From positions 2,790,001 to 2,854,000 of the forward strand of contig NC_086109.1 in the NCBI RefSeq assembly GCF_963921235.1: a DNA stretch of 64,000 nucleotides. Reading direction: 5' to 3'. Source of the DNA: Mobula hypostoma (lineage: Eukaryota). Position 1 is the stretch's first letter, and each line of letters opens with the position of its first letter. Made by a program: the position numbers and the translations under genes. Positions 27,050-27,227 of this stretch are shown piece after piece. Under the pieces are notes generated by a model, which saw only the letters and a list, made by a program, of their open reading frames with translations, did not search any database and was not told the DNA's origin.

Positions 27050-27227
27050 GCTGCACCGTGTGCCTGGAACTGCCCAAGGCCTCCACCTAAGGAAGGGCTG
27101 AGCTCGAAGAAGCGGCCGCGGCTGGAGGCCGACACGGCCTCGGGCACGAGTTCGGCGGGGGCGGTGGCGGGCAGTGCCAAGGCGGCCAGCGAGAACAAAC
27201 TGGAGGAGAGGCTGTACTCAGTGCTGT
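27050..27227 (+). pseudogene. ZFTRAF1: Circularly permuted fragment of a ZFTRAF1 (CYHR1) coding exon
   Basis: 27080-27227 reads [15 protein letters not shown]...[13 protein letters not shown] and 27052-27084 reads [11 protein letters not shown]. ZFTRAF1 as I recall it reads KKRLR...[25 protein letters not shown], so the order here is reversed. Confidence 0.85.

What the first reader, a model, noticed from the sequence alone, without database searches (positions are those of the whole stretch)
27050..27227. Circularly permuted ZFTRAF1/CYHR1 exon fragment: candidate re-integrated DNA circle (microDNA/eccDNA)
Seen: 27050-27084 reads GC TGC ACC GTG TGC CTG GAA CTG CCC AAG GCC TCC ([11 protein letters not shown]) and is followed by [24 protein letters not shown], ending CTG T at 27227. 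Joining the last base (T27227) to the first two (G27050 C27051) rebuilds TGC and the continuous RING-start [17 protein letters not shown] with no base gained or lost. Known (from recall): ZFTRAF1 reads KKRLR..[25 protein letters not shown]. So the downstream part sits before the upstream part, as expected if a 178-bp circle closed at about GCCTCC (27079-84) and was opened elsewhere on insertion. The size, high GC/CpG content and 5'-exon origin fit descriptions of microDNA. There is no poly(A) or obvious TSD, and the retained CpGs suggest a young event. Inference: germline capture of a small circle; a template-switched retrocopy is the main alternative.
Basis: partly seen in the sequence, partly recalled or inferred. 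Interest (0 to 1): 0.88.

Follow-up and report, generated by a model that had tools for sequence, protein, structure and literature searches.

The report
Repeat copy carrying a permuted exon
The 178 bases really are a piece of the ZFTRAF1 gene's first exon with its two halves swapped exactly, but they are a built-in part of a roughly 440-base mobile element with hundreds to thousands of copies in several related species, so no DNA circle landed at this spot and the swap happened once, in the element's founder.

Summary
Window 27050-27227 is an exact circular permutation of 178 nt of ZFTRAF1/CYHR1 exon 1. Real orthologues all read ..PPKKR..[25 protein letters not shown] in the native order.

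The reading "a small circle re-integrated here, recently" does not hold.
- Contigs of four species show that 26860-27299, including both supposed flanks of the "empty site", is one interspersed repeat. Summed depth is 6,000-36,000 against about 20 for the single-copy flank.
- All four species share the same junctions and the same majority letters.
- Words of the element occur in runs of at least 9 organism labels.
- This copy differs from the family majority at 18 of 440 positions. In the piece, 5 of 7 such changes are CpG decay.
- The same insertion appears to be present in a second species.

So this is an old, ordinary copy of a SINE-like retroposon that ends in (TGAC)3.

The permutation arose once, in the founder. 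Its closure lies 8-9 nt short of the conserved exon-1 donor and starts mid-exon, so it is not a canonical back-splice. A single passage round a small circle (RNA or DNA) remains the best reading, but it is inferred.

The scan had already noted at least 10 other copies in this genome, and one follow-up reached the same reading.

The parts
26808..26859 (+). Degenerate 5' continuation of the element in this copy. The 5' limit is uncertain; 26839-26859 is secure, and further left is only a gapped likeness.
   Evidence: Loose-end consensus of other copies runs at least 45 nt beyond 26860. It aligns with gaps to window 26808-26858. Contig depth here is single-copy (~20), so this stretch is too diverged to recruit other copies.
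26860..26910 (+). G+C-rich head module of the repeat family
   Evidence: Summed contig depth rises from ~20-90 to 4,500-35,000 in all four species. No tRNA or Rfam family was detected.
26911..26919 (+). Internal A9 run between two modules of the element. Its length varies among copies.
   Evidence: Sequence. One-base length variants at 26911-26913 in many contigs (table 4).
26920..27049 (+). Body of the element to the left of the gene piece.
   Evidence: High-copy depth. Contigs bridge 27049|27050: X11 26888-27105, X5 26912-27129, X9 26974-27158 and 27007-27213.
27014..27024 (+). Left arm of an 11-nt perfect inverted repeat that brackets the gene piece (partner 27248-27258)
   Evidence: I4, 100% complementary. 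The arms pair in the minimum-energy fold of the whole element. About 0.04 such pairs are expected by chance in 561 nt (my estimate). The overall fold is not better than shuffles.
27050..27084 (+). ZFTRAF1 exon-1 piece, downstream part: GC + [11 protein letters not shown]. The family majority has D for E (27069 A>C), as in the real gene.
   Evidence: the majority letter is.
27082..27088 (.). Closure junction of the permutation (..GCC TCC | G/A CC TAA G..). Its exact position is ambiguous by a few bases.
   Evidence: The eel exon continues GCCTCC GTCTATCAG|GTAAAC, and the alignment with the piece stops exactly after GCCTCC. Orthologues end exon 1 after VYQ.
27085..27227 (+). ZFTRAF1 exon-1 piece, upstream part: (P)PPKEG..KKRPRLE..low-complexity..[11 protein letters not shown] + T
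   Evidence: (colinear BLASTP from KKR to PKAS with mammalian and bird orthologues, 60-77% identity).
27228..27299 (+). 3' tail of the element. It ends in (TGAC)3 at 27288-27299, with a sharp common 3' end at 27299.
   Evidence: Depth falls from >6,000 to <60 after 27299. Many contigs end at or diverge at 27299 into unrelated sequence (loose-end agreement 0.41-0.44). Contigs bridge 27227|27228: X9 27042-27257, X5 27049-27241, X17 27062-27299.
27352..27471 (.). Fragment of a different and far more abundant repeat. It is not part of the element.
   Evidence: Depth up to 6-7.5 x 10^5. Other fragments occur in the window.

Best explanation
Shown: window ~26840-27299 (+) is one old copy of a SINE-like, non-autonomous retroposon family of about 440-490 bp. 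Its order is a G+C-rich head, an A9 run, a 130-bp body, the 178-bp ZFTRAF1 piece, and a 72-bp tail ending in (TGAC)n. The gene piece is a fixed internal module of the family. It reached this locus as part of the whole element by retroposition, not as a circle.

Inferred: the exact circular permutation arose once, when the founder was assembled. My preferred mechanism (about 0.35-0.4) starts with a reverse transcriptase copying the element's tail. It then switched onto a small circular template of 178 nt made from ZFTRAF1 exon 1, closed inside the exon and not by canonical back-splicing. It ran once round until it met its own starting point, then switched back to the element's RNA. A DNA microcircle ligated into a master copy (about 0.25) would give the same product. 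Altogether I put the chance that a circle of some kind was involved at about 0.6.
For: Repeat status: summed contig depth is 6,000-36,000 over 26872-27281, against ~20-26 at 26800-26847, in organisms A and B. The same holds in C and E at 80% likeness, with identical majority letters at 18 positions.

Bridging: contigs cross both edges of the piece in several species (records 10, 11, 20, 21, 25-29). Words of the element are held by runs of at least 9 organism labels. At least 10 other copies are noted in this genome.

Retroposon-like 3' end: there is a common sharp end after (TGAC)3, followed by unrelated flanks.

Age: there are 18 majority differences in 440 nt, and 5 of the 7 in the piece are CpG>TpG/CpA. 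A contig of organism B runs from the unique left flank into the element (record 25).

Gene origin and native order.

One founding event: no contig joins head directly to tail (no 27049>27228 joint). None shows more than one unit (no 'goes back 178'; fit_two_places = 0). Rare single-contig deletions were reported, so such joints would have been listed.

Circle: both ends of the piece fall at the same phosphodiester bond of the source (T|GC), with no base lost, gained or shared.
Against: No partner LINE was identified, and the 'RTE tail' of earlier notes was not tested. No Pol III-type head was detected. No target-site duplication was found for this copy.

Summed contig depth is a poor copy-number measure, and short contigs in repeats can be chimeric.

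The lineage's own ZFTRAF1 exon 1 was not obtained. The upstream end of the piece and the microhomology at the closure are therefore inferred from distant orthologues.

Nothing distinguishes an RNA circle from a DNA circle. No known pathway makes a non-spliced 178-nt RNA circle from inside an exon. A no-circle origin is unlikely but not excluded.
Confidence: 0.8

Rival explanations
1. One reading: a 178-bp microDNA/eccDNA from ZFTRAF1 exon 1 was opened and ligated into the germline at this very site, recently.
For: Exact permutation, 178-bp size, G+C-rich first-exon origin, no poly(A), no TSD at the edges of the piece.
Against: The sequences on both sides of the piece (26860-27049 and 27228-27299) are repeated together with it hundreds to thousands of times in four species, with contigs bridging both edges. 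This copy shows CpG decay relative to the family. Other copies are noted across the genome.
Confidence: 0.02
2. A DNA microcircle, but in the founder. A 178-bp eccDNA from the ZFTRAF1 CpG-island exon was captured by end-joining into a break in a master copy of a pre-existing element, in the loop between the 11-nt inverted repeats. That copy then amplified.
For: The closure lies inside the exon, away from splice sites, with at most about 3 nt of possible microhomology (CCG). Size and G+C content fit published descriptions of microDNA (my knowledge; not tested). The perfect 11-nt inverted repeat 27014-24 / 27248-58 suggests that head end and tail start once formed one hairpin, with the piece sitting in its loop.
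Against: No piece-less relative (head joined to tail) appears among thousands of contigs in four species. A break in one particular master copy is a very small target. Chimeras made by reverse transcription, by contrast, include element RNA by construction.
Confidence: 0.25
3. No circle. The founder's order came from two template switches on linear ZFTRAF1 mRNA, or from a window cut out of a tandem duplication, and the exact abutment is coincidence or later trimming.
For: Template switching by retroelement reverse transcriptases and chimeric retrocopies are well documented (my knowledge). Dong et al. note that non-colinear junctions can arise by reverse transcription through structured linear RNAs with close ends (PMC4897178).
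Against: Entry and exit points would have to coincide to the base, roughly 1 chance in 100 or less for breakpoints free to fall within the exon (my estimate). No off-register or multi-unit variants were seen.
Confidence: 0.13
4. The likeness to ZFTRAF1 is a chance feature of a G+C-rich repeat.
For: The upstream 38 residues are low-complexity, and no same-lineage parent was recovered.
Against: 22 of 22 residues are identical to a motif conserved from insects to mammals when the family majority letter at 27069 is used; this copy has E for D at that site, so 21 of 22. The E-value is 4e-4 in 5.8 billion proteins. The DNA match to eel exon 1 is 66 nt at 83%. The order KKRxR, low-complexity stretch, [22 protein letters not shown] is colinear with orthologues.
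Confidence: 0.01

Closest known systems
circRNA-derived pseudogenes (Dong et al. 2016, Cell Res, PMC4897178), especially the 33 mouse circRFWD2 copies flanked by LTR sequence
   Same: Host-gene sequence sits in the genome in non-colinear order. It is multiplied to many copies in association with retroelement sequence, has no poly(A) tail, and is shared by related lineages.
   Different: There the diagnostic junction is an exon-exon back-splice (exon 6 to exon 2). Here both ends lie inside one exon, and the closure misses the conserved exon-1 donor by 8-9 nt. The carrier here is a short non-LTR, SINE-like element with orders of magnitude more copies, and exactly one circumference is present.
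microDNA / small eccDNA (Shibata et al. 2012, Science; from my knowledge, not read here)
   Same: Size near 180 bp, G+C-rich 5' exon / CpG-island origin, closure not at splice sites with short or no microhomology.
   Different: MicroDNAs are described as somatic extrachromosomal products. Germline re-integration followed by amplification inside a retroposon has not, to my knowledge, been described. At this locus the piece did not integrate on its own.
LINE-tailed SINEs and internally deleted LINE derivatives (Ohshima 2013 review, PMC3747384; e.g. HE1/HER1 and SacSINE1 in sharks, RTESINE1, Bov-A2)
   Same: Short, non-coding, interspersed and high in copy number. It has a modular build (head, body, tail), a 3' end in a short tandem repeat rather than poly(A), and is shared across related species.
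   Different: No tRNA, 5S or 7SL head was detected and no partner LINE tail was matched here. I know of no listed SINE family that is described as containing a host protein-coding exon piece, let alone a permuted one.
Chimeric retrocopies formed by reverse-transcriptase template switching (e.g. U6-L1 chimeras, Buzdin et al.; from my knowledge)
   Same: A mosaic of unrelated RNAs joined without long homology at sharp junctions, with a retroelement 3' part at the 3' end.
   Different: Those chimeras are colinear copies of linear RNAs and are mostly single-copy dead ends. Here the middle module is an exact rotation, and the chimera became a successful mobile family.
Gene-fragment capture by transposons (Pack-MULEs, Helitrons; from my knowledge)
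   Same: A host exon fragment amplified as the passenger of a mobile element.
   Different: Those are DNA transposons with terminal inverted repeats or Helitron ends, and their captured fragments are colinear. Here there are no terminal inverted repeats and the 3' end looks like that of a retroposon.

Membership tests
Re-integrated microDNA/eccDNA at this locus | The circle-derived piece is flanked by the uninterrupted target (an empty site exists once the piece is removed) | tested here: not met
   Both flanks are part of the same repeat unit as the piece in four species. No contig has 27049 joined to 27228.
Re-integrated microDNA/eccDNA at this locus | Exact circular permutation of a contiguous source segment | tested here: met
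   T27227 + GC27050-51 restores the first Cys codon, and the DNA alignment to eel exon 1 is unbroken across the joint.
Re-integrated microDNA/eccDNA at this locus | Short direct repeat (microhomology) at the two source ends of the circle | tested here: inconclusive
   Judging by orthologues, at most about 3 nt (CCG) could be shared between ..GCCTCCG|TC.. and ..CCG|CCTAAG... The lineage's own gene was not available.
circRNA-derived pseudogene | Non-colinear junction in host-gene sequence | tested here: met
   The closure ..PKAS|(P)PK.. lies at 27082-27088.
circRNA-derived pseudogene | The junction coincides with a splice donor joined to a splice acceptor (back-splice) | tested here: not met
   Exon 1 ends after VYQ (CAG|GT) in fishes, birds, mammals and insects. 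The piece stops 8-9 nt earlier. Its other end lies inside the uninterrupted exon-1 ORF of every orthologue. This was tested on orthologues, not on the lineage's own gene. An alternative alignment that reaches the donor needs one substitution plus a 2-nt deletion.
SINE / non-autonomous non-LTR retroposon | Short, non-coding, interspersed, high copy number | tested here: met
   About 440-490 bp. Depth ratio of roughly 300-1,800 over single-copy sequence. Unrelated flanks beyond 27299. No Pfam family in its ORF.
SINE / non-autonomous non-LTR retroposon | Defined 3' end with a simple repeat or poly(A) | tested here: met
   (TGAC)3 at 27288-27299, with a common end at 27299 across copies.
SINE / non-autonomous non-LTR retroposon | Pol III promoter head derived from tRNA, 7SL or 5S | tested here: inconclusive
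   ARAGORN and Rfam found nothing in the window copy or in a composite with the 45-nt family 5' extension. That extension contains a TGGTCGAGTGG string resembling an A box (by eye only). The true 5' end of the family was not reached.
SINE / non-autonomous non-LTR retroposon | 3' tail shared with a partner LINE (earlier notes say RTE) | not tested
   No other match to 27228-27299 in the window. No repeat library is available. The LINE ORFs in the window look CR1/L2-like and do not share the tail.
SINE / non-autonomous non-LTR retroposon | Target-site duplication | tested here: inconclusive
   No shared word of 7 nt or more between the 5' and 3' flanks. The 5' limit of this copy is uncertain and the copy is old.

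The most novel reading that the evidence does not exclude
The body of a successful retroposon family, shared by a whole clade of species, preserves exactly one circumference of a 178-nt circle. The circle was made from inside a housekeeping gene's first exon and closed without the spliceosome. This would be a germline fossil showing that small non-back-spliced circles (microDNA, or an RNA counterpart) can be copied or ligated into mobile elements and then amplified thousands of times.
Probability: 0.55. Interest if true: 0.7.

Novelty: new variant of a known kind. Interest (0 to 1): 0.42.

Why it matters
For this locus, not much: it is one decayed copy of a repeat, and automated scans will keep flagging every copy as a 'captured circle'.

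For the family, there are three points.
- It offers thousands of independent copies of one ancient junction set, namely one closure and two entry/exit points. From these the founder can be reconstructed and compared with the species' own ZFTRAF1 exon.
- That comparison can decide whether small circles from CpG-island exons enter the germline, and by what enzymology. This is an open question for both microDNA and circRNA-derived pseudogenes.
- It would also add a case of a SINE body built from a protein-coding exon.

Tried and rejected
- Search for the lineage's own ZFTRAF1 exon 1. The 120-aa ORF across the element gave no hit. The 49-aa upstream piece against 1.84 billion representatives gave no hit. 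The rotated majority peptide and then a 6-sequence profile found 138 orthologue exon-1 ORFs (teleost, bird, mammal, insect), but none with the piece's own N-terminal stretch.
- Parent gene in the laid contigs. No 'goes back 178' joint appeared at 85% or 80% likeness. The tool's filter for human-like conserved sequence may hide it, so this proves nothing.
- Metagenome scan for the 23-nt closure word. The one hit (L001) shares only about 27 nt and nothing else, so it is chance.
- tRNA, Rfam and hammerhead-type explanations for the head or for an RNA circle. There was nothing above noise, and the only Rfam row has E = 0.44.
- The 120-aa ORF 26936-27298 as a real protein. It has no Pfam family, no homologue and only noise in the Atlas, so it is rejected.
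- Tail stem-loop. The fold is no better than shuffles.
- TSD search. None was found.
- Organism identification through an exact-protein look-up of a window LINE ORF. It is not on record. My impression that this is a cartilaginous fish rests only on recalled LINE motifs and is not used as evidence.

Full report
**What is in the sequence**

- Window 27050-27084 reads GC + [11 protein letters not shown].
- Window 27080-27226, one frame over, reads [49 protein letters not shown].
- The last base, T27227, joined to G27050 C27051 makes a Cys codon, so the rotated piece reads ..[23 protein letters not shown].
- The piece is 178 nt, 68% G+C, CpG o/e 0.75. The surroundings have 46% G+C and CpG o/e about 0.4.

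**Is it really ZFTRAF1, and is the native order the other one?**

Yes on both counts.
- The rotated peptide, with five positions set to the family's majority letters (see below), found six exon-1 ORFs at E about 4e-4 in a database of 5.8 billion proteins. Each is 22/22 identical over [22 protein letters not shown].
- A profile of those six found 138 relatives. Some are named by their sources as zinc finger TRAF-type-containing protein 1 (bird, primate) or cysteine and histidine-rich protein 1 (beetle).
- Every vertebrate member reads ..D-x-PPKKR-x-R.., a short low-complexity stretch, then [25 protein letters not shown]. In genomic ORFs a read-through V (GT..) follows; in the spliced bird protein, CTNGHLMC.. 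follows.
- Pfam places the start of the RING finger at the CCTVC.
- In eel genomic DNA (L002) the exon ends ..GCCTCCGTCTATCAG|GTAAAC.
- The rotated piece aligns to the eel exon over 66 nt at 83% identity. The alignment runs straight across the rotation point and stops exactly after GCCTCC.
- The motif is conserved from insects to mammals, so the direction of transfer is gene to repeat.

The source order is native, the source is one gene, and the two parts are contiguous at CTGT|GCTG.

**Why the local-circle reading still fails**

I laid public contigs on window 26800-27500.
- The unique left flank, 26800-26847, has summed depth about 20-26 in organism A and 17-22 in organism B.
- From about 26860 to 27299 the depth is 6,000-36,000 in both.

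A second lay at 80% likeness gave more.
- The profile is the same in two further organisms (C and E).
- The same majority letters differ from this copy at 18 positions in all four.
- Contigs bridge the left edge of the piece: X11 26888-27105, X5 26912-27129, X9 26974-27158 and 27007-27213.
- Contigs bridge the right edge, or both edges: X9 27042-27257, X5 27049-27241.
- After 27299 the contigs run into unrelated sequence (agreement 0.41-0.44).

Words of the element alone occur in runs of at least nine organism labels. The scan's notebook lists at least ten other sightings of the same 178-bp permuted piece in this genome. One lies 9.6 kb before this window, and one follow-up reached the same "copy of a mobile family" reading. 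My contig evidence tests that claim independently and agrees with it.

**Anatomy of the element**

On the + strand the order is as follows.
- A G+C-rich head. The family consensus extends at least 45 nt beyond 26860, and this copy is degenerate there, back to perhaps 26808.
- An internal A9 run (26911-26919).
- A 130-bp body.
- The 178-bp gene piece.
- A 72-bp tail ending in (TGAC)3 at 27299.

The 3' end in a short tandem repeat, the sharp common 3' boundary and the modular build are those of a SINE-like, LINE-dependent retroposon (background: PMC3747384).

Several defining features could not be shown.
- No tRNA or Rfam family was found in the head.
- No partner LINE tail was found in the window.
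- No target-site duplication was found.
- The "RTE tail" of earlier notes remains untested.

An 11-nt perfect inverted repeat (27014-27024 / 27248-27258) brackets the piece and pairs in the minimum-energy fold. I expect only about 0.04 such pairs by chance. This hints that head end and tail start once formed one hairpin, with the piece now sitting in its loop. The fold as a whole is no better than shuffles.

**Age**

- This copy differs from the family majority at 18 of 440 positions, about 4%.
- Seven of those lie in the piece. Five of the seven are CpG to TpG or CpA changes (27085, 27099, 27165, 27173, 27220).
- The copy keeps 15 CpG against 20 in the majority sequence.
- The majority letter at 27069 turns E into D and restores CLDLPKAS as in the real gene.
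- A 341-nt contig of organism B runs from the unique left flank into the element (26800-26941, record 25). This particular insertion therefore seems to predate the split of two species.

The "young event" inference is not supported.

**When and how the permutation arose**

The same rotation point and closure appear in all four species. No contig joins head directly to tail, and none shows more than one unit. Rare single-contig deletions were listed, so such joints would have been seen. The permutation was therefore present in the founder of the family, and the family did not exist in numbers without it.

The closure is not a canonical back-splice. Its downstream side stops 8-9 nt before the exon-1 donor, which is conserved from insects to mammals. 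Its upstream side (CCG CCT AAG, compared with eel CCG CCC AAG, the PPK codons) lies inside the uninterrupted exon-1 ORF of every orthologue.

An alternative alignment reads GCCTAAG as a mutated GTCTACCAG, which would carry the piece to the donor. It needs a substitution, a 2-nt deletion and an unknown acceptor before GAAGGG. I give it about 0.2. Only the lineage's own gene can settle this.

The strongest argument for a circular template is that the two outer ends of the piece fall at the same bond of the source, with nothing lost, gained or shared. Two independent breakpoints on linear RNA, or a window cut from a tandem array, would match that only about once in a hundred or fewer (my estimate).

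Two mechanisms give exactly one circumference.
- A reverse transcriptase switches onto a circle and stops on meeting its own start.
- A double-stranded microcircle is cut once and ligated into a break.

I lean slightly to the first, because chimeras made during reverse transcription carry the element's head and tail by construction. A break in one master copy, by contrast, is a tiny target. The intra-exon closure, the 178-bp size and the CpG-island origin fit descriptions of microDNA better than any known RNA circle, so the lean is weak.

**Comparison with what is known**

The nearest published parallel is the set of circRNA-derived pseudogenes. The closest of these is the mouse circRFWD2 group: dozens of copies, no poly(A), flanked by LTR sequence (PMC4897178). 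The present case differs in four ways.
- The junction is not an exon-exon back-splice.
- The carrier is a short non-LTR element.
- The copy number is far higher.
- Exactly one turn is present.

I do not file it as a circRNA-derived pseudogene, because the defining back-splice feature was tested on orthologues and not met. I do not file it as a re-integrated microDNA at this locus, because the empty-site feature was tested and not met. It behaves like a SINE, although two defining SINE features remain untested or inconclusive.

**Limits**

- Contig depth sums are only a rough guide to copy number, and short contigs in repeats can be chimeric.
- Organism names were coded.
- The lineage's own ZFTRAF1 gene could not be retrieved with the capped searches.

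Noticed in passing
window 1-14240 vs 29002-42253: A segmental duplication of about 28.6 kb at 93-97% identity. It carries Ig-like exon ORFs; 7916-8389 and 36513-36986 encode identical 157-aa ORFs. The element studied here lies in the unduplicated stretch between the two blocks.
   Followed up: partly
window 55003-56806: Tandem array of a 58-bp unit, about 31 copies at ~90% identity.
   Followed up: no
window 27352-27471 (also 24421-24478 -, 20453-20509 +, 48522-48556 -): Fragments of a different interspersed repeat that is about 30 times more abundant than the ZFTRAF1-bearing family. Summed contig depth reaches 6-7.5 x 10^5 against ~20 for single-copy sequence, and it is also abundant in RNA libraries.
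   Followed up: partly
window 16069-18306 (+), 52167-53278 (-), 8520-8966 (-), 37117-37563 (-): ORFs that look like the endonuclease, reverse transcriptase and C-terminal parts of CR1/L2-like LINEs. None shares the 72-nt tail of the element studied.
   Followed up: no
window 27014-27024 and 27248-27258: A perfect 11-nt inverted repeat brackets the captured gene piece, 25 nt to its left and 20 nt to its right, and is unchanged in the family majority. It may be the remnant of a hairpin into whose loop the piece was placed.
   Followed up: partly
L001 (metagenome contig WNFD01020658.1) 6098-6124: An exact match of about 27 nt to the closure region of the piece (TGCCCAAGGCCTCCACCTAAGGAAGG), with no similarity on either side. 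I take it as chance in a very large database.
   Followed up: yes
window 57731-58977: Overlapping long ORFs rich in Pro, Ser and Leu with internal repeats (SPSPPIPLLPSS..). This is probably simple-repeat DNA rather than a gene.
   Followed up: no
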